The notes under the pieces: model-generated
Seen by the model: only the letters and a program-made list of their open reading frames with translations
What the model was told of the DNA's origin: nothing
Database searches by the model: none
Program-made: the position numbers and the translations under genes
Assembly: GCF_964204865.1 (NCBI RefSeq)
Contig: NC_135257.1
Coordinates: 22,072,001 to 22,136,000, forward strand
DNA from: Styela clava
Lineage: Eukaryota
Direction of reading: 5' to 3'
Length of the DNA: 64,000 nucleotides
In this document: piece after piece, positions 30,770 through 43,151 of the stretch
Numbering within the stretch: position 1 is the stretch's first letter
Layout of the letters: the number at the start of each line of letters is the position of its first letter

Positions 30770-33475
30770 GGAGATAGTAACAGTAATCACCAGTGCAGCA
30801 GAATCCAGATTCCACATCAACATCACTACTGATGACCTCAAATCTTTGCCTAAAACAAGAAATATAGAATCTATGGAAAACTCTGTAGAAATGACAGAAT
30901 CAGTACAAGCGATAGATACACAAATGCCAATAAAACATTCATGGGCTTTTCAATACTGCAATGGAATTGCTGCAGCATTAGACACAAGGACTTAGACTTG
31001 GTCTATCTTATATACCACAAGGCAGAAACACCAGACATTATATGCTTACAAGAAACATGGCTGAATGACACATTCGAAATACCTGGATACAAAATATATA
31101 GAAAGGATAAAACAAGAATAAGAGAAGATGGTTGTCTCATAGCAATGAAAAATGCTCATTCTTCCAAAGAATCTATTATAAATATCAGCAATATGGAAAT
31201 ACAAGCAGTGGAAATAAATGGGATCAATATAGTGAACGTATATACCTCTGGAACAAACATAACAAAGAAAAACCTAAACCAAGTGCTCAATTGCTTTGGG
31301 AGGAGAACTGTAATATGTGGTGATTTGAATGCCCAAAACACTATCTGATATTGCTCACAAACAAACTCTAGAGGTCTGGAAGTACAATCATGCATTAAGC
31401 AAAATAATCTTGTTTTGCTAAACGATGACTCCACAACTATAGAAGCCAGAGGACACCAGGGATCAATCATTGATCTTTGTATAACCATAAATGATATTGC
31501 CCATGCATGTACTATAGAAACACTACAAGAAAATCTGAACAGTGACCACAACTTGCTGTGGATAACAGTGAACAAAATTTCAAATTTAGATCCTGCTTCA
31601 GAATCCCAAAATGTATCAACGAAAAATACAGATTGGGTAAAATATAAATTTGAATGTTTTGAGAACATAAACGGTGCAACAAAAAACGAAAATATAGATG
31701 AATTTAATACTAACCTGTCGCTTGGAATAATACAAAGTGTCATAGCCTCTAGTCCCATCCCAGTAAAAAGACACATAAGAAATCCCATACCATGGTGGAA
31801 TTCGAATTGAAGTAAGGCTGTAAAACAAAAAAACAAGCATATAGAAGGGCCAAGAGAACATGTTTACCACAGGATCTCATTAATTATAAAAAGATGGAGG
31901 CTTCGACCAAAAAAATTATATTGCAAAATAAGAGACAATACTGGGCAAACAAACAACTTCTTTGGTACTCTAAAAACAAATCCTAAAGAGGTCTGGAATG
32001 CTATAGTATAAATAGTATGAGAGGAAATACAAAAACCCAAAACCACAAATATTAATCAATGATCGGACAATAACGGATGACATAGAAAAAGCAAACATCT
32101 TTGCACAATCATTTGCAGATATTGTATGCAAAGACAATACAGGAGAGACTATTACTATGAACAAAATAATTCGGGAAAACTACTACCAAAATGTTAAACA
32201 AAGTATTTTGCAACAAGAGGCTTAGCCACAAAGATCATACAACAGACGTATAACAATATTCGAATTGAACCTGGCGCTTAAAGAAACAAGAAATACAACA
32301 CCAGGTCTGGACTAAATAACATATCATGTGATAAAACATCTCCCTGTCCAAGTAAAGGAATTTTATTGCATCTCTACAATACAATTTGGGAAACAGGTCA
32401 AATGCTTGAATCATGGAAGCATTCAATAATGATACCGATTTTGAAAACGGGTAAACCAAAAGATGACCCAATGTCTTACCGACCCATATCGCTGACATCA
32501 TGTTTATGCAAAATATTGGAAAAGATTATTGTAAAACGACTAAGGACCTATCTGGAATTTAACGGGAAACTAAACTCAGTGAAAAGCGCATTTAGGAAAC
32601 AAAGGTCAGCTTTGGATACTCTAATATGCCTACAAGATGACGTACTCAAAGCATTACAAACCAGACAAGTAACATTAGCCATATTCTTAGACTTTCACAA
32701 AGCTCATGACACAGTTTGTCCCAGTGGATTGCTGGGCAAAGTAGCAGATTTGGGGGTGGAAGGACATATGCCCAAATTTAATAAAAATTTTCTACGAAAT
32801 AGATCATCAAATGAAATATCTCTCACCGTACCATACGTGGATTTCCTCAAGGTTCAAGCTTATCTCCTGTTCTATTCAATATAATGATAAATGACCTTCC
32901 GTCAATTGTAAATAATGCAAATTCAGGCCAATTTACAGACGATTTTGCTATATATAAAACCCGAAGAGATGTGAAATCCATAAAAAGAACAATGCAAATA
33001 AATTTGGACAAAATAAAGGAGTGGTGCAAAATATGAGGAATGGCTCTATCTGTCACAAAATGCGAAGCAATGTTATCCAGCTGAAGAAGATATAATCCTA
33101 ACATCAACCTCAAAATATCAGAAAAATTTATACCAATAGTTAACAAGACAAAATATCTCGGTGTCATTTTGGATAAAAAACTAAATTGGAAAGACCATGT
33201 GGAATATATGATAACAAAACTTAAACAACGATTAATTATTCTTAGATATATCAGTGGAAACAAATGGGGATCAGACTGCATACAATGGTTCTTCTTTATA
33301 TATCACTAATTCGCTCTGTATTTGATTATGCATGTCAGCTATATTGTTCTGCATCTAGGACACTATTGACAAAACTAGATACAATTCGGAATGATGCATT
33401 GCCAATTTGTCTTGGTGCTATGAAAAGTACACCGATTGATGTAGTACTACATGCCTGCTCAGAAATGCCCACTGT
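30770..33475 (+). mobile_element. I/Jockey-group LINE remnant, unit-2 copy (APE + RT)
   Basis: Colinear with 15375-16653 and continues into RT: YRPISLTSCLCKILEK, FLDFHKAHD, PQGS, degenerate QFTDD, KYLGV. ORF1 was removed by a deletion at ~30760. Confidence 0.85.
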
Positions 33476-35630
33476 AAAAAATGATAAAATTTGATAATAT
33501 ATACACCTCATAAAATTTATACAGTAGCATTTCATCCATTACGCACGTCATTAATACAGTATCGGACCACATTTTATGCCCGCAAAATAATATTAAACAA
33601 ACGAAAAAAGTGCGCTGGGGAAAGGGTACCTGGCGGAACAACATTATGCTTTATGGTGACCAGACTTACATCAAGCTAATTCAAAACACTTATAATTCCG
33701 CTCTTCCTAACTTATATGACTATGATTCGATACTGGACTGGTGGGACTATATAAAAACTAAAATTAAGAAATACACCATTGCATTTTCCCAATCCTATCC
33801 CGGGACAAAAAGAATAACATATGTCAACTATGAGAAAGTTTAACAAAACTTATAAACGAGGGCACCAAGGGAAATGCAATGAAAATACAAAACTACAAAT
33901 CGAAACTCAATACCCTGCTAGAGGAGCGACAGAAATTGGACATCCTGATGGCAAACCTGGAAGACCTGGAGGACGGTGAGAAGCCGACAAGAACCGTCTA
34001 CGAAAGGATCCAACGAAGGGCCAAGCAAACCACAATAGAGCGCCTGAAAGACCAAAATGGTTGCATGACCACAAATGAGAACGAGGTCATGGCAACAATT
34101 GAGGTCTTCTATGGAAGTTTGATGGGAGGCGGGTGCGAGACCGACGCGCAACATCAAAAACACTATCTCTCGCTCATGAGTACTAGCTCGATATCGGACA
34201 TAGATACCACCATCTTAGAGCAATACGTGACCGCCGACGAGATATATAACGCGATAAAATCTATGCGCAATAATAAGTCGCCCGGCCTGGATGGTCTATC
34301 TAAAGAATTTTATATAACGTTCTGGGGAACTATAAAAAAACAATTCACCCAATTGATCAACAACATCATAATTTTCGGCCAACTTCCCAAAACATCAAAA
34401 CTAGCAAAAGTAAAACTACTGTATAAAAAAGACGAAGAATCGGAACTTAAGAACTGGCGCCCTATCACAATACTCAACTCGGACTATAAAATATTATAGA
34501 AAATTTTAGTGAAACGATTGGAACCCGTCCTGGCATATATAATTAGTCCATCACAGAAATGTGCGCTACCGCGAAGGACAATGTTTGACGTTCACTATAA
34601 TACGGAGGCTATAATTCGATACTGTAAAACTAAAAATATACCTGGATCATTAGTTCTAATAGACAACTTGAAAGCATTTGACAACGTAAATCACAAATTC
34701 TTACTGGACATCTTAAAACAAATTGGACATGGAAATCGGATTCTGAATTTAATAAAAAACATATACTCCGCCAATAGGAGTCGCGTGGACGTAAATGGCA
34801 GGCTTACCGAGGAGATTACTGTCCGGGGCGGCATCAAACAAGGATGTCCATTAAGCATGCTTTTATATACCGTATGTGTCGAACCCTTAGCCAGATCCGT
34901 CATCATGAACAAAAATATACGTGGTCTTAAACTAGGTACGCACGAGCATAAATTAGATCAATATGCGGATGACGTCACCTTTGCTGTATGTGTTCAACCG
35001 TCCATCACGGAGCTATTTCACGAACTTGAAAAATTTCAATTCGCATCTGGCCAAAAAATCAACGAGGAAAAGACCCAAATTTTCTGCATCACCAAACGCT
35101 CTTACAATTGGATCTACAATTCTACATTCAGGCAACATATTAGAGATGACGTGAAAATTCCTGGACTTAACTTCGGGCAAAAACGGTTGGACAAAATCTG
35201 GGAAAAAATTCAAACAAAATTAATTCACAGTTGAGCTGTGCTCAGTTGAGCTGTGCTATTCATGGCATTCACGGAAGCCCTGGGCCAATGTCATGCTATT
35301 TGGCACGCTCAGGGCCGAAGTTTAGGCCACGTAATGCAGAGCAGATACGGAAGCCGGGGTGGCGGAAGTCGTGCTGTGTCCTACATGGTATAGACAGAAG
35401 CACCGGGAAAAAGTTGTGATGTGATATACAGCATGTACCGAACCCCCGGGGTGGAAGTCTGTGCCGTGCTATGGCGCAGCTAACCGAAGCCACCAATTCC
35501 TATGACTGCTGCTTATGCAGTGGCATGCTTATGAAGCGCTATTCCGATAAAGCTCGGGTATGACATGTCTTTTAGACACTGATCCGAATTTGGGAAACTT
35601 CTGATCCGTAAAAATTAAAAAAAACAAAAA
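33476..35630 (+). mobile_element. L1/Tx1-type LINE E1: 5'-truncated ORF2 (APE end + RT) joined to a structured tail and poly(A)
   Basis: SDH, WGKGTW, KSPGLDG, NWRPITILNSDYKI, GIKQGCPLS, QYADD. The ORF breaks at 35231 into the tail module, which ends CTGATCCGT followed by an A-tract. Confidence 0.85.
35228..35609 (+). ncRNA. 5'-truncated box C/D-like module M1 (3' end of E1)
   Basis: Near copy of 36630-36983; intact k-turn hairpin at 35551-35590; D box 35601-35604 followed by TCCGT; 15-bp duplication CAGTTGAGCTGTGCT at the 5' junction. Confidence 0.6.
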
Positions 35631-37009
35631 CGACCAGTTCTGGCATACAGAGGCCTTATATGACTTAGGGTCAAAAATCAACATTGTAAACCGGCGGCTA
35701 TATAATAACTCGATGCCCCATCCACCAGCAATTCCATCAAACTGGAAGGACATCCTGGCCATTTTTCGATCTCTAAACCTATCACCGGAGCAATGGGAGG
35801 ATGCAAGGCACAAGGATCTATACTATAGACTTAAAAGCAGACACCACAACCAACCCCACGAAAATATCAACTGGGAGGAGGTTCATCTGCTCAGGAATCG
35901 GCCCAAATATACGAACGCTGAAAGGATAATATCTTACCGTATAGTAAAGGACGGCTATATTTTCGGCGATCGAATGCGAGGCATGAGCCTTAGGCACGGC
36001 CCATTCGGGATCATAAAAATTATGAACTGTAAATTTTGTAGAGATCCGTGTGACAATACTAAGCACATATTTCTGCATTACAAGATCATAGCGGCATATG
36101 TTGCAAGTTTAATAGAATTCCTAAATGAAATTTTATGCGGGACCACCACAATCTCTAGAGAACAAATATTCCTTAATAGTTTCAATGGGCCAAACGAGAT
36201 TGCGGTTACGAAATGTTTCGTGCTACTCAAACAGGCAATTATACATAGGGAAATCTCTCTAGATATAGAAAATCGGTACATCGCTCCCACAGACGGAAAT
36301 ATTACAGATGCGGCCATAACCAAATTTTCGGAATTTCTTCTCGTAATGGAAAAAAGGTTCACAGATATACAATTTCTCGGCATACAAAATAACTGGAAGG
36401 AAATACTTAACCGATATCTTCTGCCATGAAACCGAAGCGACAAAAACATCGTCCATTTTTAGCCTATTTTATATCAACATACCCATGACCCCCATAACAG
36501 GGAGCATATTCACAGATAAGACCATTATTAACCCCCAACGGAAATGATGAATCGAAAGCTTCACGGTAGATGTCATGCTGTGTGCGTGTTACACGTTTTC
36601 ACACAGTGTGTACGGAAGCCGCGTCGGCGGAAGTTCAGCTGTTCTATGCATGGCATTGACGGAAGCCTTGGGCAAATGTCATGCTATTTGGCACATAGTA
36701 TGTACATTAGCTCAGGGCCGAAGTTTGTGCCACGTAATGCAGAGCAGATACGGATCCGGGGTGGCGGAAGTCGTACTGTGTCCCACATGATATAGACAGA
36801 AGCCCCGGGAAAAAGTTGTGGTGTGATATACAGCATTTACCGAACCCCCGGGGTGAAGTCTGTGCCGTGCTATGGCGCACCTAAGACCGAAGCCACCAAA
36901 TCCTATGACTGCTGCTTATGCAGTGGCATGCTTATGCAGTGTCTTTTAGACACTAATCCGAATTTGGGAAATTTCTGATCCGTAATAAAAAAAAAAAAAA
37001 AAAAAAAAA
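35631..37009 (+). mobile_element. L1/Tx1-type LINE E2: ORF2 C-terminus (zf-RVT-like CKFC...HIF) + 3'UTR + poly(A)
   Basis: ORF 35713-36429 is homologous to the E4 C-terminus; A-tract at 36984-37009. Confidence 0.85.
36538..36983 (+). ncRNA. Box C/D-like structured RNA module M2 (3' end of E2)
   Basis: ACGGA-a-ATGATGA (C box 36544-36550) ... TT-CTGA (D box 36975-36978)-TCCGT, forming a perfect 5-bp terminal stem; internal hairpins with NGAA/NGAA loops. Confidence 0.65.
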
Positions 37010-37870
37010 CGACATTATTGCTGACATTATTCGCTATTTGATTAAGGCCCTCGATAACGAAGAAAACGAAAGACAAAGACGATGAGCTACGCCGCCGCCG
37101 CATTCTCGACTCCTCCCACAGAAGAAGTTTCCGCTGCTGCATCATCTCGACCTCGGACGCTCTTCCTGAAGACCGACGAAAACATGGATTTCCACAAGAT
37201 GATGGACGTCCTCCGGAACAACACCACAACAAGGAGGTTCTGCGACCAGGTGAAAGGGCTGTTCGAAGGCCGCAGAGGGATCTGGATCCTCACCTTTGCG
37301 CCAACGGACAGCCCGAATTCTAGCTGCAGAGAGAGTTTTCTTTCTTCTACAGGTGGCCTGATACAAACGGCTGAGAGTAACATCCATGTGACACTACCAA
37401 GTAAAGCTCCTGTCCGGATCTCCATACGGGGAATTCCGGCGGAAACTCCATACAACATGGCGGTCACCAAGATCAACAAGCTGGGCTGTGGAACGGAACG
37501 GAATGCAGTCCAAAATTGGTATCGAGGGACCGACGTCTACAACGGGCACACGTCATTCCTAATGGACGGTTTTAAAAAAGACCGTTTGCCGGAATACGTG
37601 GTTATCAATGGTGAAAGCTGCAAGACCTTCCTCGCACGAGAGTTATACACTCCGACGTGTGGGAAGTGCCTAACCACCGGCCATGTATACAGTGAATGCA
37701 AGAACGAAGCCGTCTGTAAGTATTGTAAAACACCGGGTCACTTACTAAGAGAATGTCAACAACGAAAGCGTGATCCAGTCTTCACCAACCCTGTGACAGG
37801 ATGGAACATGCCTCCGCAGAAAAGAAAACCCCTGCGAAAACATACGCAACAACCACATCAGAAGGTCGTT

Positions 37871-37997
37871 CAATCTGCTGAAACAACAGAGCAGAGCCAG
37901 AGTGACGTGCAAGCTGCCGAAACAACAGAGCAGAGCCAAAATGACGTGCAACCTGCTGGATCAACAGAGCAGAGCCAAAATGATGCACAACCTGCTG
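37871..37997 (+). repeat. 39-bp coding tandem repeat in ORF1 (QSAETTEQSQSDV x ~3.3)
   Basis: ACAGAGCAGAGCCA recurs every 39 nt. Confidence 0.85.
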
Positions 37998-38588
37998 TAT
38001 CATCTTACGAGGTACGTGAATTTTCTTCTGACTTCGAAATAAATTGCCTAAAAGAAATAAAAAAAAATGATCGGAATGTGAAGATGTCGACAACGTCGTG
38101 AGTCCAATCAAAACTCCATCACCACAACGGCTATCTAGACCAAGGCAAGTCTACAGATTGAAGGAGTCATCGACAATTGGCAACACGCCATTCCATCCCC
38201 TTTCAAAGGGAAATCCTTACATCAAAGTAAGGATCAATAACTTTGAGTCCTGCGACACCACGTCTTCGTCGGTCTTCAATACAACACCGAAAGCAACACC
38301 ATCTGCGCCAGTCAGCCAAACCGCCGTCAATTGTGAATCTGACAGGGGACAGCAACAAAAGGAGCAGAGACACAACAACATCCACAGATTCCTCGACATC
38401 TCAGACAACCACCCAAAGAACTCGCGGTAAAAAGAAAAAATAACTACAAATTTCGCCCTCATTCAACCAAATTTCTCTGCTCTTACCTTATTTAGATCTT
38501 TTGAACAATTCAAATCACAATTCGGCTTATATAACGCCTGGTTGACGGCGTAAAACCCCAACCAATCAGAAATACCATCCCACATAAA

Positions 38589-38739
38589 GCGGATGTGATG
38601 AATGGAAGACTACCTATTTATGTGGCTTATAAAATGGTGATCTCTATGGCAAAGAGAATTGATCCATAAAACTTCCGTCGACATAGTCTGGGTATGAATG
38701 CATTTGGGCTGGATTCCAGACTTTGTCGTTCTGATCCGT
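38589..38739 (+). ncRNA. Box C/D-like RNA module M3 (151 nt, 3' end of E3)
   Basis: GCGGA-t-GTGATGA (38595-38601) ... TT-CTGA (38731-38734)-TCCGT; inner helices ATGGAAG/CTTCCGT and CGACA-AGTCTGG/CCAGACT-TGTCG. Confidence 0.65.
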
Positions 38740-38750
38740 AAAAAAAAAAA

Positions 38751-41700
38751 AGGGGGGGCCTGTCTTGGCGCGCTTACCTGGACAGCAGACAGCTGGTGTC
38801 GTTTTGGGCGTCAAAACCCCGCTGCAGTCCGTCTAGTTTGGGGGAGACCCTCCCGCCGCATTGAAACACAAAGAGAAATAACTTCGGACCCAGCAGATTT
38901 GGCATCAAAATAAAACTCGGATCTATCGGATATAGCATTGGAAAACTTGGAATGCACAAACAAAAGAAATAGGCAGGACACCTTCTCATCCGAAGCCTCC
39001 ACGTCAACCCAGAAAGAAAAGAAAGAAACAAAACACCTGGTAAAAAAAAGAACATACGTGAGTAACCTCTTTTCGAACAGTAAAACTTTAGACTCGTGAT
39101 GAAATTATTAGAAAACTGGTAATACCAAAACGCTTACCACAACTCCTAGTATAAATCCCCTAATAACTGCAGTTTTCCATGATGGCTGGCTTAAAGATAA
39201 TTTCCCTAAATGTCAATGAATTGCACAACACCAACTAAATAGGGTTGGTAACTTTTTAAGACATGGAAACCCTGATGTACTGTGTATCCAGGAAGCTCAT
39301 AGAGCTGATAAGACCTTTGTATGGCGGTGGGCACATGACCGGAATGTCATATCCATTGTAATACCCTGAATAGGGAGGACAAGCACTCCTCACAGTTTAG
39401 GCAAGGGACCGCAATCCTCATAAAGCACGAAATCGCAACACCACCATCCCCATTTACAATACACATCCAGCATAGATGTGATAGTATTGAGGTGGAGCTG
39501 GACAATCGCATAATTAAGATCTTCAACGTGTACGCCCCAGCAAATAATGGACCCCAAATGACGGACTTTTTCAAACACCTAACTAACATTTTAACCAATT
39601 ACTGTGATTCGGCTGAAATAATAATTGTCGAATATTTCAATATAGTATTGGAAATTATTGATGTAATAAACGATAAAAACTTCAAATTGCAACCCCCTGG
39701 GAAACTTTTTAAGAACTTTATTCAGCGCCATAATATATTAGACACCTTTAGAAAAAAGTATCCGTTTAAACAAATTTTTACGTATCATCGTAACAAGCAA
39801 GGCCGTAGGATTGACCAGATATACCACTCATATAATTTAGAAGACGTAATTTCCGAATTAACTCACGTCCCGAATACTATCTCGGATAATATACTTTGCC
39901 CCCAAATATCCTTAGAGAAAATTAAAAAAGTTCGATGGGGCCGAGGAACATGGAAAAGCAACACCTCCCTATACAGAGATAAAAATTACATAAAAATAAT
40001 AGAAAACACTTACCAGGAGGCAATAATGGATATGGAAAAATTTAGTTACATACAAGAATGATGGGACATGGTGAAAAGCAGGATCAAAAAACAAACTATA
40101 GAATATTCGAAAACCCTAAAAAGAAACAAAATGAACAATTCGATTTGATTACGGAAACATCTGGACAAATTAATAAATGAGGGAAAGAAAGAAAATTTGG
40201 TAGAAATTAAAAGATTAAAATCTCAACTTATGATATATCAAGAAGAACAGAACGAACGGGATATTATAACGGCTAACATGGAGAACCTTGAACAAGGTGA
40301 AAACCCGACTAAAACATTTCACGACGAAATTCGACAAAGAGCAAAACAAACCACCATCGAAAAACTCAGGGACGATAACGATTGCATGGTAACCGAGGAA
40401 GGGGAAATTATGACTTTGGTGGAAAATTTTTATGCCGATTTATGGGGGGAGGAAAATTTGATACGAGAAAAAACCAAAATTACTACCTATCTTTGATGGA
40501 CTCTATAATTGTTACGGAGGAAGAAAATCTCATTCTAGAACAAAATATCACACAGGGTGAAATACATAGGGCAATAAAATACATGAAAAATAATAAATCT
40601 CCGGGAATGGTTGGATTAGGTAAAAAATTTTATTTGACTTTTTGGAACTGCATAAAAAAGGAATTTACTCAAATGATCAACCACATATTTAATTTCGGCA
40701 ACTTCCCAAATCTGCAATCACAGCAAAGGTTAAGTTATTATATAAGAAGGGTGACAAAACGTATCTCAAAAATTGGAGGCCCATCACTACATTGAACGTA
40801 GATTACAAAATTGTATCTGAAATTCTCATTGAAAGATTGGAACCAAGGTTAAACAAAAAACATCTCAGGGGCAATAGTACTTATCGACAATCTAAAGGCA
40901 TTTGATAGGGTCAATCACAACTTCTTGTTCAAATTACTTCAGCGGATAGGACTCGGACAAAGATTTTTAAATGTAAAAAGAGACATGTATGGCGGCATAA
41001 AAAGCGTCATAGACGTGAATGAAAGGCTGTCAAACGAAGTAGGCATAGAGCAAGGCATAAGACAAGGATGCCCCTTGAGCATGTTGCTCTATGCACTGAA
41101 TTCGGAACCGTTGGCAAGATCGGTACATCGAAACGGCAACATGAGAGGGATAAGACTAGGTAAATATGAATATAAAATTGATCAGTATGCCGACGATATC
41201 ACTATAAACAATCAGGGACCAGTAATCAATACCGGAAATATTTCGAGAACTAAATAATTTTAAATTGGCAGCTGGGCAGAAAATTAATATTGATAAAACT
41301 GAAAAATACTTTGTATTACAAAAACCGCGCATGATTCCATAAATAATTCGACATACCAAAATTACATAAAAAACAACACCCGGATACTTGGCATAAATTT
41401 TGGAGATAAGGGACAAGAAAAAATTTGGCAAGATATCGAATACAGGCTACAAGGAATTTTAATCACGTAAAATTGCGGAGCCTTACCTAGTTTGGAAAAT
41501 TAATCGTAATCAATGCGTTAGTCATGTCTATTATAATTTTCCATGCCCGAATCAAGTGTATCCCTAGTAGAATAATAACTAGAATCCATAGCGCATGTTA
41601 TAAATTTTTATGGCATCCACAACGAATAGAAGCGGTGGGTAGAAAGACCCTACGGAATAGTTGGGAAAACGGGGGGACAAACATGTTTGATCTCCAGGCA

Positions 41701-43006
41701 AAGATTGAAGCATGCCTAGTTGAAAGGATTCGGGACCTCATAAGCAGAACAACGCCAACTCAGTTTTGGCACTTTGAGGCCCTATACGCCCTGGGTTCGA
41801 AAATAAATGCGGTAAACAAACATCTATATACCAACTCGATGCCGCACAGCAGCGATGTCCCAAAAATGTGGTACAATACTCGAGGTATTTAAAGAGGTCA
41901 ATTATACGCAAGCGGAATGGGAGACGGCTCGCCACAGGGACGCCTGTACGCGAGACTGAAGAAGAAACACCCAGACCAACAACAATCGGACCTAAACTGG
42001 AAAGAAATTCATTTGCTTACGAACACATATAGGACCAAATTTTCAAATATCGAAAGAGTATTTTCATACCGGATTTCAATTAACGGGTACATCTTTGGAG
42101 ACAAAATGCGGACAATGGGACTTAAGGATATTAAGTTGGAAATTTTGCAAGATTAATACAGACAACACTAAACACATCTTCCTCTCCTGCGTTAAAATAG
42201 CCAAATATATCTCGGACATCACTGAAGCCTTAAACCAAATTTGTCGTAAAAATATCATAATAACCCCGAAAGAAATAGTGTATAATGGATATCAAGGGCC
42301 CCATCAACTTATGGTAACAAAATCTTTTGTGCTACTGAAAAAAAAACGTAATACAAGAAAAAATAAAGATGGAGATAAAAGACAAATACATGGACCCCGA
42401 AGAGGACACAATTTTGGCCACTACAATAAGAAACATTACAGAATTTATCACAATTATGGGATATAAATTTGGCGATGTACATTTTTTGGAACTGGTAGAC
42501 AACTGGAAACACATTTTAAACGGTTATGCAACAAAATATTAACTTCATTGTTCGAAACTAGGTAATAGCAATATCATCTCCAACTACCATAAGTGGTAGC
42601 CCGAATCAATAACCAAAACGGCCAGAAAAACACAATTTTTTTACCTCGAGGATACCATCCGATACAGCAGAAGTGATGAATCGGGAGCTTCTCGGTGAAT
42701 GTCGTGCTGCGTTATACGCGGTATGTACGGAAGCTGGGGTGGCCGAAGCTGTGCCCTGCCGTGCATGGCATGGACGGAAGCCCCACGTTGAAAAATATGC
42801 ATTGCATACGTAGAAGCCTGTGGTGGAAGTCTGTGCTTTGCAGATGCGCGGCAGATACTGAGGCCCCCGGAAGTGTATGACTACTGCATGCAGTAGAATG
42901 CTTATGAAGCGATTGACCAATAAAACTCGGATATGACGTGTCTTCAAGACACTGATCCGAGTCTGGAAAACTTCTGATCCGCCAACAAAAAATAAAAAAT
43001 AAAAAA
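38751..43006 (+). mobile_element. L1/Tx1-type LINE E4: ORF1 C-terminal fragment, frameshifted near-full ORF2 (39184-42543), 3'UTR, A-tail
   Basis: MAGLKIISLNVN, NVYAP, RIDQIY, WGRGTW, KSPG, NWRPITLLNVDYKI, GIRQGCPLS, QYADD, CKFC-like finger. Clearly diverged from E1/E2. Confidence 0.88.
42667..42982 (+). ncRNA. Box C/D-like RNA module M4 (3' end of E4)
   Basis: GCAGA-a-GTGATGA (42673-42679) ... TT-CTGA (42974-42977)-TCCGC; canonical-looking k-turn hairpin at 42925-42962. Confidence 0.65.
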
Positions 43007-43009
43007 CTG

Positions 43010-43151
43010 ACATAGCAGTCCCCCAGGTAAATTTATGAATGTTGCGTATGCAACAATATGCTTATGAAGCGTAATACCGCAATGCCTCGGACATGACGTA
43101 TCGTTGTGCTACTGATCCGAGACAGAACGTACTCTGATCCGAAAAAAAAAA
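43010..43151 (+). mobile_element. L1/Tx1 tail-only fragment E5
   Basis: Shares ATGCTTATGAAGCG, the k-turn hairpin and the CTGATCCG-poly(A) end with E1 and E4. Confidence 0.7.

What the first reader, a model, noticed from the sequence alone, without database searches (positions are those of the whole stretch)
35228..43151. L1/Tx1 retrotransposons that end in a box C/D snoRNA-like, kink-turn RNA module
Seen: five separate element tails end in CTGA-TCCG(T/C) immediately before poly(A), with D boxes at 35601, 36975, 38731, 42974 and 43134. The three tails that retain their 5' part begin (A/G)C(G/A)GA-N-RTGATGAA (C boxes at 36544, 38595, 42673). This gives a terminal stem, box C, box D and stem II (TGAA/TTCT), as in box C/D snoRNAs. 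The frame is kept although the interiors are 151, 316 and 446 nt and largely unalignable. Established: C/D motifs form k-turns that bind 15.5K/Snu13 (L7Ae family), recruit NOP56/58 and fibrillarin, block exonucleases and direct nucleolar localisation; LINE 3' tails are ORF2p recognition sites. Inference: this LINE lineage uses snoRNP mimicry to stabilise, localise or mark its RNA, or releases mobile snoRNA-like RNAs. I know of snoRNA-derived retroposons but not of an autonomous LINE clade with a built-in C/D 3' module. The sequence just upstream of box D is not conserved, so a methylation-guide role is doubtful.
Basis: partly seen in the sequence, partly recalled or inferred. Interest (0 to 1): 0.9.

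Follow-up and report, generated by a model that had tools for sequence, protein, structure and literature searches.

The report
LINE tails framed like C/D snoRNAs
Several families of jumping genes in this sea-squirt genome end in a folded RNA module whose two ends form the box C/D kink-turn of small nucleolar RNAs, and this module is far better conserved than the genes it follows, so it is probably a protein-binding handle for the element's RNA, though binding of snoRNA proteins is untested.

Summary
Five same-strand L1/Tx1-type elements are stacked head to tail at 33476-43151. Every tail ends in CTGA-TCCG(T/C/A) before an A-run. The three tails with a complete 5' part start with a 5-nt stem, one free base and RTGATGAA, which is exact box C/D kink-turn geometry.

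Across the genome there are two module classes, long (about 330-470 nt) and short (about 130-150 nt). They sit on many ORF2 families and on ORF1-only elements. With only flanking anchors fixed, the C box is intact in 51 of 52 copies and the D box in 30 of 31 loci.

The long module is a structured RNA. It has 16 compensatory pairs against 8.1±1.7 in shuffles. Median identity between families is 83%, against 57% for the adjacent ORF2 DNA. A second kink-turn hairpin lies 22 nt upstream of box D.

No Rfam family reaches its threshold. The only sub-threshold hits are C/D snoRNAs.

Context: the elements insert at the exon|intron junction of putative spliced-leader RNA genes and carry the leader at their 5' end.

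Not shown: binding of Snu13 or fibrillarin, discrete tail RNAs, or conservation in other species. No conserved guide sequence exists.

Two earlier notes of this scan (s1-822901, s1-825749) reported the same module elsewhere in this genome.

The parts
33476..35227 (+). Element A body: 5'-truncated ORF2 (about aa 219-790 of a full-length relative), then an internal deletion that runs into the tail
   Evidence: tblastn with P0009; RVT_1 domain in 34509-35234; closest solved relative is human L1 ORF2p, E 1e-23
35228..35609 (+). Long-class module lacking its 5' part. Internal CTGATCCGA at 35579; box D at 35601-35604; 3' stem TCCGT at 35605-35609; A-rich run to 35630
35631..36537 (+). Element B: 5'-truncated ORF2 C-terminus (ORF 35713-36429) and the variable 3' UTR, including the ACCAT(T/C) motif upstream of the module
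36538..36983 (+). Complete long-class module (446 nt): stem ACGGA 36538-42, bulge base 36543, box C 36544-50, box D 36975-78, stem TCCGT 36979-83; A-run to 37009
37010..37046 (+). 5' end of element C: partial plus complete copy of the putative spliced-leader exon (22-mer at 37025-37046, ending ATTAAG), joined directly to the element body
   Evidence: The same 22-mer is followed by GTRAG and a hairpin in tandem units of about 260-490 bp in many loci. L047 shows the exon|element junction in place.
37082..38430 (+). ORF1 of element C (CCHC zinc knuckles), broken by one frameshift near 38060-38100. There is no ORF2 in this element.
38589..38739 (+). Short-class module (151 nt): stem GCGGA 38589-93, bulge base 38594, box C 38595-601, box D 38731-34, stem TCCGT 38735-39; A12 to 38751
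38752..42666 (+). Element D: 5' region without ORF1, then a degenerate ORF2 (about 39181-42540, many stops) and a 3' UTR with the ATACCATC motif
42667..42982 (+). Long-class module (316 nt): stem GCAGA 42667-71, box C 42673-79, internal kink-turn hairpin 42926-42961, box D 42974-77, stem TCCGC 42978-82; A-rich run to about 43006
43007..43151 (+). Element E: tail-only fragment with a variant internal kink-turn hairpin (43086-43121), box D at 43134-37, TCCG, then A10

Best explanation
The tails are a self-contained 3' RNA module of a diverse group of L1/Tx1-type retrotransposons, carried by both ORF2-bearing and ORF1-only elements. Many of these elements sit at the exon|intron junction of putative spliced-leader RNA genes. 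The module is closed by a canonical box C/D kink-turn: a 5-bp stem I (RCGGA/UCCGY), a 3-nt bulge N-R-U, tandem sheared G.A pairs, then U.U, G-C and A-U. It holds a second kink-turn hairpin with the same CGGA/UCCG stem, and it also holds GGAA/GGAA-type internal loops. The most likely mechanism, which is inferred, is as follows. A host L7Ae-family kink-turn protein (Snu13/15.5K) binds the kink-turns and locks the fold. The resulting RNP marks and protects the 3' end of an element RNA that starts with the leader exon, so is probably made from an snRNA-type promoter. It also presents the adjacent A-tract to the element's reverse transcriptase. Because the module is shared, ORF1-only elements can be handled in trans. 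Shown here: the motif, its geometry, its fold, its covariation and its exceptional conservation. Inferred: which proteins bind and what the complex does.
For: 1. Geometry is exact in both classes and in all three complete window tails.
2. RNAalifold closes both classes with the terminal stem and pairs G6-C1 and A7-U of stem II.
3. The long class has 84 pairs with 97.2% of cells paired. Sixteen pairs show compensatory change against 8.1±1.7 in shuffles (0 of 500 reach it), and slid controls give 1-5. The outer stem pair is A-U in 9, G-C in 3 and G.U in 2 sequences, and never A.C.
4. With only flanking anchors fixed, RUGAUGA plus RCGGA is intact in 51 of 52 copies. L1 varies (A, C, U), L2 is a purine and L3 is always U, as kink-turn-binding proteins require. 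CUGA plus UCCG(U/C) is intact in 30 of the 31 loci listed.
5. Between families, median module identity is 83%. The last 690 nt of ORF2 are 57% identical (42% at protein level), and the UTR between the stop codon and the module is 58% identical. Conservation begins at the first stem base.
6. Short modules that are about 92% alike sit on ORF1s that are only 45-50% alike.
7. The NC stem of the internal hairpin varies while keeping its pairs: GUGUC/GACAC, GUAUC/GAUAC and GUGUUA/UAAUAC.
8. Genome counts against reversed-pattern controls: 42 short frames against 0, and 89 copies of hairpin plus box D against 0.
9. The only Rfam families that show up at all are C/D snoRNAs; the best is RF00304 in a global alignment, 17.8 bits, E 0.28.
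10. Leader exon at the 5' end of the element.
Against: - No protein-binding data exist.
- The stem I sequence is conserved rather than freely covarying. That fits a sequence-specific reader, possibly the element's own protein, at least as well as Snu13 alone.
- Some related ORF2 families in the same arrays have a different tail without a C/D frame (L061, L062, L064), so the module is not obligatory for this lifestyle.
- There is no conserved C'/D' pair and no conserved guide.
- The long modules (330-470 nt) are larger than typical C/D snoRNAs.
- High conservation could partly reflect exchange of tails between families in head-to-tail arrays; tail and ORF distances correlate only moderately (rho 0.59).
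- No second species could be examined.
Confidence: 0.5

Rival explanations
1. The module is recognised only by the element's own proteins (ORF2p and/or the CCHC ORF1p), as in 'stringent' LINE/SINE 3' tails. The kink-turn is merely the RNA's architecture, and the likeness to box C/D has no consequence for host snoRNP proteins.
For: The module is shared between ORF2-bearing and ORF1-only elements, as LINE/SINE partners share tails. The CGGA/UCCG stem sequence is invariant in both kink-turns, which suggests sequence-specific reading. A further conserved ATACCATC motif lies upstream of the module.
Against: ORF2 families only 27-50% identical in their C-terminal parts keep modules that are 80-90% identical. 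Co-evolving self-recognition would predict that tails diverge along with their enzymes. The terminal motif also matches the snoRNP-specific stem II positions (U.U, G-C, A-U), which a generic kink-turn does not need, and the internal kink-turn does not match them.
Confidence: 0.3
2. The tails are processed out of element or host transcripts into free, stable C/D snoRNA-like RNAs that act in trans, for example as methylation guides or regulators.
For: RNA-like runs from three studies hold tail contigs. One tail sublineage with at most 8 genomic copies (C8:7.63-7.86 Mb) stands in contigs of depth 900-3600, while ORF contigs of the window's own families lie at depth 0-30.
Against: Contig depth and contig ends cannot show the level or termini of an RNA, and the ORF of that sublineage was not on the stretch laid. 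Other contigs run from the UTR through the tail into flanking DNA. The bases upstream of box D are not conserved and are paired in the short class. There is no conserved C'/D'.
Confidence: 0.1
3. The module is a relic of a host C/D snoRNA captured once by template switching, as in snoRNA retrogenes or platypus snoRTEs, and has no present function for the element.
For: The boxes and terminal stem are what a captured snoRNA would leave behind. Only C/D families give weak Rfam hits.
Against: It is conserved far above the neighbouring coding DNA and has many compensatory pairs. It occurs in two size classes on many families. No Rfam family reaches threshold. Capture could explain the origin but not the maintenance.
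Confidence: 0.05
4. The resemblance is due to chance.
For: A bare frame with a stem of 4 or more bp arises about 1.4 times per 64 kb in simulations.
Against: The frame coincides with the module boundaries and the element's 3' end, recurs in two classes, and is intact in 51 of 52 and 30 of 31 copies sampled with only flanking anchors fixed. Reversed-pattern controls give 0.
Confidence: 0.02

Closest known systems
Box C/D snoRNAs, especially independently transcribed ones such as U3, U8 and U13
   Same: They share RUGAUGA near the 5' end, CUGA near the 3' end, a 5-bp terminal stem, a 3-nt bulge ending in U, tandem G.A pairs, and U.U/G-C/A-U in stem II. U3 also has a second, non-canonical kink-turn (B/C), as summarised in PMC5499572. 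General knowledge of the class is my own, supported by PMC10557570.
   Different: The module here is part of a protein-coding retrotransposon RNA and is followed by an A-tract. It has no conserved guide and no C'/D' pair. The long class is 330-470 nt. No Rfam family matches.
snoRNA retrogenes (snoRTs; PMC1687206) and platypus snoRTEs (from my own knowledge: Schmitz et al. 2008)
   Same: They link snoRNA-type sequences with LINE-driven retroposition and poly(A) tails.
   Different: In those cases a host snoRNA is a passenger copied by a LINE, or is fused to a LINE tail. Here the C/D frame is the LINE's own 3' module, linked to ORF2 or ORF1 in many families.
Stringent-type LINE 3' tails shared with non-autonomous partners (eel UnaL2/UnaSINE1, R2 3' UTR; from my own knowledge)
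   Same: Both are conserved, structured 3' elements next to the priming site that are shared with non-autonomous elements.
   Different: The known tails are simple stem-loops or pseudoknots, not kink-turns. Here the tail is better conserved than the enzyme, which is unusual.
Telomerase RNAs with a snoRNP domain (H/ACA in vertebrates; C/D with NOP58 in Trypanosoma brucei, PMC10061497)
   Same: Both are reverse-transcriptase template RNAs that carry a snoRNA-type 3' domain, used there for stability and biogenesis.
   Different: In telomerase the protein binding has been demonstrated. Here it is only inferred, and the RNA is also an mRNA.
sno-lncRNAs and SPA lncRNAs (PMC12084880)
   Same: These are long Pol II transcripts whose ends are defined and protected by a snoRNP.
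   Different: In SPAs the snoRNP caps the 5' end and the 3' end is polyadenylated. Here the module lies just upstream of the A-tract.
Retrotransposons specific for spliced-leader genes (SLACS/CZAR in trypanosomes, NeSL-1 in nematodes; from my own knowledge)
   Same: They insert at a fixed site in tandem spliced-leader RNA genes.
   Different: Those elements use a restriction-like endonuclease and belong to early-branching clades. These have APE plus RT of the L1/Tx1 type and carry the C/D-type tail.

Membership tests
box C/D snoRNA (class) | Box C RUGAUGA near the 5' end and box D CUGA near the 3' end | tested here: met
   Window tails. With only flanking anchors fixed, intact in 51 of 52 and 30 of 31 copies.
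box C/D snoRNA (class) | A terminal stem of 4-5 bp next to the boxes, giving kink-turn geometry (3-nt bulge ending in U, tandem G.A, U.U, G-C) | tested here: met
   RCGGA-N-RU-GAUGA against CUGA-UCCGY. The stem closes the consensus fold in both classes, and the outer pair is A-U, G.U or G-C.
box C/D snoRNA (class) | Internal C'/D' boxes | tested here: not met
   No conserved D'-then-C' pair. One sublineage (L063) has an internal UGAUGA. The internal kink-turn has hairpin topology, not C'/D' topology.
box C/D snoRNA (class) | A conserved antisense guide of 10-21 nt upstream of D or D' | tested here: not met
   The roughly 14 nt upstream of box D differ between sublineages and lie in a helix in the short class. 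Complementarity to rRNA itself was not tested.
box C/D snoRNA (class) | Match to a curated family | tested here: not met
   Nothing reaches a gathering score. Best hit is RF00304 at 17.8 bits against a cut-off of 54.
box C/D snoRNA (class) | Discrete non-polyadenylated RNA bound by Snu13, NOP56/58 and fibrillarin, located in the nucleolus | not testable with these tools
   Only contigs of RNA-like runs were available.
L1/Tx1-type non-LTR retrotransposon | APE endonuclease plus reverse transcriptase in ORF2, with a zf-RVT-type C-terminus | tested here: met
   RVT_1 in element A's ORF2 (34509-35234). Exo_endo_phos was found only in 30941-31348, in a different LINE upstream of the stack. Element D's degenerate ORF2 aligns from residue 22 of the 1166-aa relative P0009, so it spans the N-terminal endonuclease region. 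Human L1 ORF2p is the best solved relative. The nearest atlas clusters carry zf-RVT. Intact ORFs of about 1160 aa occur elsewhere in the genome.
L1/Tx1-type non-LTR retrotransposon | ORF1 with CCHC knuckles | tested here: met
   Weak zf-CCHC hits in 37082-38101, below Pfam's cut-off. Homologues in Styela clava.
L1/Tx1-type non-LTR retrotransposon | Placement in the Tx1 clade by an RT tree | not tested
   No reference LINE set was available. Site-specific insertion is typical of Tx1.
stringent-type LINE 3' tail | A conserved structured 3' element shared with non-autonomous partners | tested here: met
stringent-type LINE 3' tail | Required for recognition by the element's RT | not testable with these tools
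   Needs a retrotransposition or binding assay.

The most novel reading that the evidence does not exclude
The element RNA begins with the spliced-leader exon, so it is probably made from the snRNA-type promoter of a spliced-leader gene. Under this reading it is matured like an independently transcribed C/D snoRNA of the U3 type. A full snoRNP (Snu13, NOP58, NOP56, fibrillarin) assembles on the 3' module, defines and protects the 3' end, may recruit cap hypermethylation so that the leader-headed RNA looks like a genuine trans-spliced mRNA, and routes the RNA through nuclear bodies. The retrotransposon RNP would then be built on a snoRNP chassis, as telomerase RNAs are.
Probability: 0.2. Interest if true: 0.9.

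Novelty: new variant of a known kind. Interest (0 to 1): 0.7.

Why it matters
How LINE RNAs are chosen, stabilised and handed to their reverse transcriptase is known for only a few elements. No autonomous LINE has been reported to carry a snoRNA-type kink-turn module; I found none in four literature searches. Here the module is more conserved than the enzyme it follows. That points to a constant, probably host-encoded partner and gives a directly testable case of a retrotransposon borrowing the snoRNP toolkit. Together with the use of spliced-leader genes as landing site and promoter, it would show a mobile element assembled almost wholly from host small-RNA machinery. It would also parallel telomerase RNAs, which carry snoRNP domains.

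Tried and rejected
1. Rfam at permissive thresholds, on the region and on isolated modules: no family, only weak C/D hits.
2. Nucleolar link through position: the 18S genes lie at C6:4.97, C17:16.6, C2:27.7-28.8, C5:22.0-22.2 and C3:5.07 Mb, not next to the LINE clusters. Rejected.
3. My first reading of the arrays, which was insertion into earlier poly(A) tails and 'monomeric 5' UTRs': replaced. The repeats of about 260-490 bp are putative spliced-leader RNA genes (...ATTAAG|GTRAG plus a hairpin), and many elements sit exactly at that junction.
4. 'No polyadenylation signal, hence snoRNA-type end formation': dropped. There is no AATAAA or ATTAAA in the last 60 nt of 49 tails, but the A-rich linker plus the A-run often forms one, and linkers are inherited within lineages.
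5. Discrete RNA ends from RNA-like runs: the contigs start and end inside the module or run through it, so nothing can be concluded.
Two metagenome pattern scans found nothing.
8. Per-site constraint within the young short-module family: too few substitutions to have any power.
Full report
**What is in the window**

Between about 33476 and 43151, five same-strand non-LTR elements lie head to tail.
- A is a 5'-truncated ORF2 with an internal deletion that runs into its tail.
- B (35631-37009) is a 5'-truncated ORF2 C-terminus with a complete tail.
- C (37010-38751) has a short leader, a frameshifted CCHC ORF1 and a short tail, but no ORF2.
- D (38752 to about 43006) has a 5' region without ORF1, a degenerate ORF2 and a tail.
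- E is a tail fragment.

All five copies are broken; I only describe them. Among solved structures the RT is closest to human L1 ORF2p (E 1e-23). The nearest atlas clusters carry zf-RVT. The best hits for ORF1 are uncharacterised proteins of the ascidian Styela clava. The assembly has 377 Mb in 380 contigs, and the window is C9:22072001-22136000.

**Check of the observation**

- Each complete tail starts with a 5-nt stem (ACGGA, GCGGA or GCAGA), one free base, and A/G-TGATGA-A.
- Every tail ends with TTCTGA-TCCG(T/C/A) followed by an A-run.
- Read as RNA, this is the box C/D kink-turn in exact register. Stem I abuts a 3-nt bulge (N-R-U). The bulge is followed by G.A, A.G, U.U, G-C, A-U and A-U.
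- In simulations a bare frame arises about 1.4 times per window, but a 5-bp frame directly before an A-run arises only 0.02 times. Two are seen.

**Genome-wide picture**

The modules are multi-copy and fall into two classes.
- The long class is about 330 nt. Versions of 435-470 nt carry an internal insertion or duplication.
- The short class is 130-150 nt.
- The window's 316-nt and 446-nt tails are therefore homologous and alignable. Only the short class has a different interior.
- Both classes share about 20 nt at the 5' end and about 11 nt at the 3' end.

Linkage to coding bodies:
- By coordinates, long modules follow ORF2 C-termini that are 35-95% identical to the query.
- Short modules follow ORF1-only elements whose ORF1s are only 45-50% alike, while the modules are about 92% alike.
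- One ORF2 family at 33% identity also carries a short module (L063).
- Three other ORF2 families in the same kind of array end differently and have no C/D frame (L061, L062, L064).

The frame is thus a lineage feature that is neither universal nor a loose snoRNA retrocopy.

**Is it constrained?**

My first list of tails was drawn with a regular expression that required the boxes, so I repeated the test with only flanking anchors fixed.
- Between ATACCATC and the downstream block, 51 of 52 copies keep RCGGA-N-RUGAUGA. L1 is A, C or U, L2 is a purine, and L3 is always U.
- Between the internal hairpin and the A-run, 30 of the 31 loci listed keep CUGA-UCCG(U/C).
- Full short frames occur 42 times and hairpin-plus-box-D 89 times. 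Reversed-pattern controls give 0.
- Between families the module is 83% identical at the median. The last 690 nt of ORF2 are 57% identical (42% at protein level), and the UTR between the stop codon and the module is 58% identical.
- Conservation starts at the first stem base, although a further ATACCATC motif lies 9-14 nt upstream.

**Structure**

- Single-sequence folds and RNAalifold close both classes with the terminal stem.
- For the long class, 84 pairs are 97.2% paired. Sixteen pairs show changes on both sides, against 8.1±1.7 in shuffles (0 of 500 reach that), and slid controls give 1-5.
- The outer pair of stem I is A-U (9), G-C (3) or G.U (2), and never A.C. The other four pairs never change to another standard pair (one sequence has an A.C mismatch), so the support for stem I from covariation is thin.
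- The short class shows compensatory changes between the common type and L063 in its 3' helix.
- In the long class, a hairpin whose 3' CUGA lies 22 nt upstream of box D reads CUCGGA-UAU-GA-C-helix-loop-helix-U-GA-UCCGAG. This is a second kink-turn with the same CGGA/UCCG stem, and its distal helix varies while keeping its pairs.
- Several GGAA/GGAA-type symmetric loops add further tandem G.A motifs.

**Known families**

No Rfam family reaches its threshold. When a module is searched alone, the only hits are C/D snoRNAs, led by RF00304 in a global alignment at 17.8 bits against a cut-off of 54. There is no conserved C'/D' pair. The roughly 14 nt upstream of box D vary between sublineages and are paired in the short class. 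A conserved methylation guide is therefore excluded.

**Context**

Earlier notes of this scan led me to check the junctions.
- A 22-nt motif ending in ATTAAG is followed by GTRAG, a hairpin and a U-rich stretch, in tandem units of about 260-490 bp. This fits tunicate spliced-leader RNA genes.
- At least 17 of 49 sampled tails are followed, after their A-run, by that intron part.
- In L047 the exon is joined directly to an ORF1-only element.
- Element C of the window starts with the same exon although it lies off-target (37025-37046). Its template RNA therefore began at the leader.
- This explains the same-orientation arrays. It suggests transcription from an snRNA-type promoter.

I did not verify that the motif is the species' spliced leader.

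**RNA**

Four RNA-like runs from three studies were laid; that they are RNA is the tool's guess, and only contigs were available. They hold ORF1, ORF2 and tail sequence. One tail sublineage with at most 8 genomic copies stands in contigs of depth 900-3600. Contigs cannot show RNA ends or levels, however, and that sublineage's ORF was not on the stretch laid. I therefore draw no conclusion about discrete tail RNAs.

**Reading**

Shown: a conserved, structured 3' module framed by a canonical C/D kink-turn and shared by coding bodies that have diverged widely.

Inferred: a constant partner binds it. Snu13/15.5K is the obvious candidate, because the terminal motif matches even the stem II positions that snoRNP assembly needs. 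The complex would then mark, protect and present the RNA's 3' end.

The main rival is recognition by the element's own proteins alone. The invariant stem sequence favours that rival. The mismatch between enzyme divergence and tail conservation argues against it.

**Limits**

- Two metagenome scans were blank.
- No other species could be examined.

Noticed in passing
window 37025-37046; L047 2510-2535; L012, L020, L037, L055 and other loci: A 22-nt motif ending in ATTAAG is followed by GTRAG, a hairpin and a U-rich stretch, in tandem units of about 260-490 bp. These are putative spliced-leader RNA genes. Elements sit exactly at the ATTAAG|GTRAG junction, and retrocopies carry the exon at their 5' end.
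   Followed up: partly
window 37010-38751; L032-L060: ORF1-only elements (leader, CCHC ORF1, short module, poly(A)) are independent retrotransposition units with many copies. They resemble HAL1 or HeT-A in having gag but no RT.
   Followed up: partly
window 38752-39180: Element D starts with seven G after the previous A-run. It has about 430 nt of 5' region and then ORF2, with no ORF1. Whether ORF2-only units are normal for this lineage is open.
   Followed up: no
window 36523-36527, 38572-38579, 42653-42660; 52 genomic copies: A conserved ATACCATC motif lies 9-14 nt upstream of the module's 5' stem in tails 3 and 4 (38572-38579, 42653-42660). Tail 2 has only ACCAT at 36523-36527, followed by T. 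A similar AATACCGAT precedes the internal kink-turn hairpin, as if the two kink-turns arose by duplication.
   Followed up: partly
L061 1-700, L062 (minus strand), L064 1-640: Related ORF2 families in the same arrays have a different, C/D-free 3' UTR. It ends in ...GTAAGTAT...GGTTGAGGCC(T/C)A... before the poly(A) and has its own long closing helix.
   Followed up: no
e.g. C2:23800535, C2:25135416, C2:26118696, C3:7643812: Between UCCG(U/C) and the pure poly(A) many copies carry an A-rich linker of 2-20 nt. The linker is shared within sublineages, so it is inherited and not added at random. It often forms AATAAA or ATTAAA together with the A-run.
   Followed up: partly
C8:7631542-7854976; L036 1690-2010: One long-module sublineage with only 5 exact and 3 near-exact genomic copies, all in one C8 cluster, dominates the tail contigs of the RNA-like runs (depth up to about 3600).
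   Followed up: partly
window 30941-32884: Fragments of another, more distant APE plus RT element lie on the same strand just upstream of the stack.
   Followed up: no
window 38981-39114 (minus strand): A weak SNORD15-like Rfam hit (21.9 bits against a cut-off of 75, E 0.23) lies antisense in the 5' region of element D. It is probably chance.
   Followed up: no
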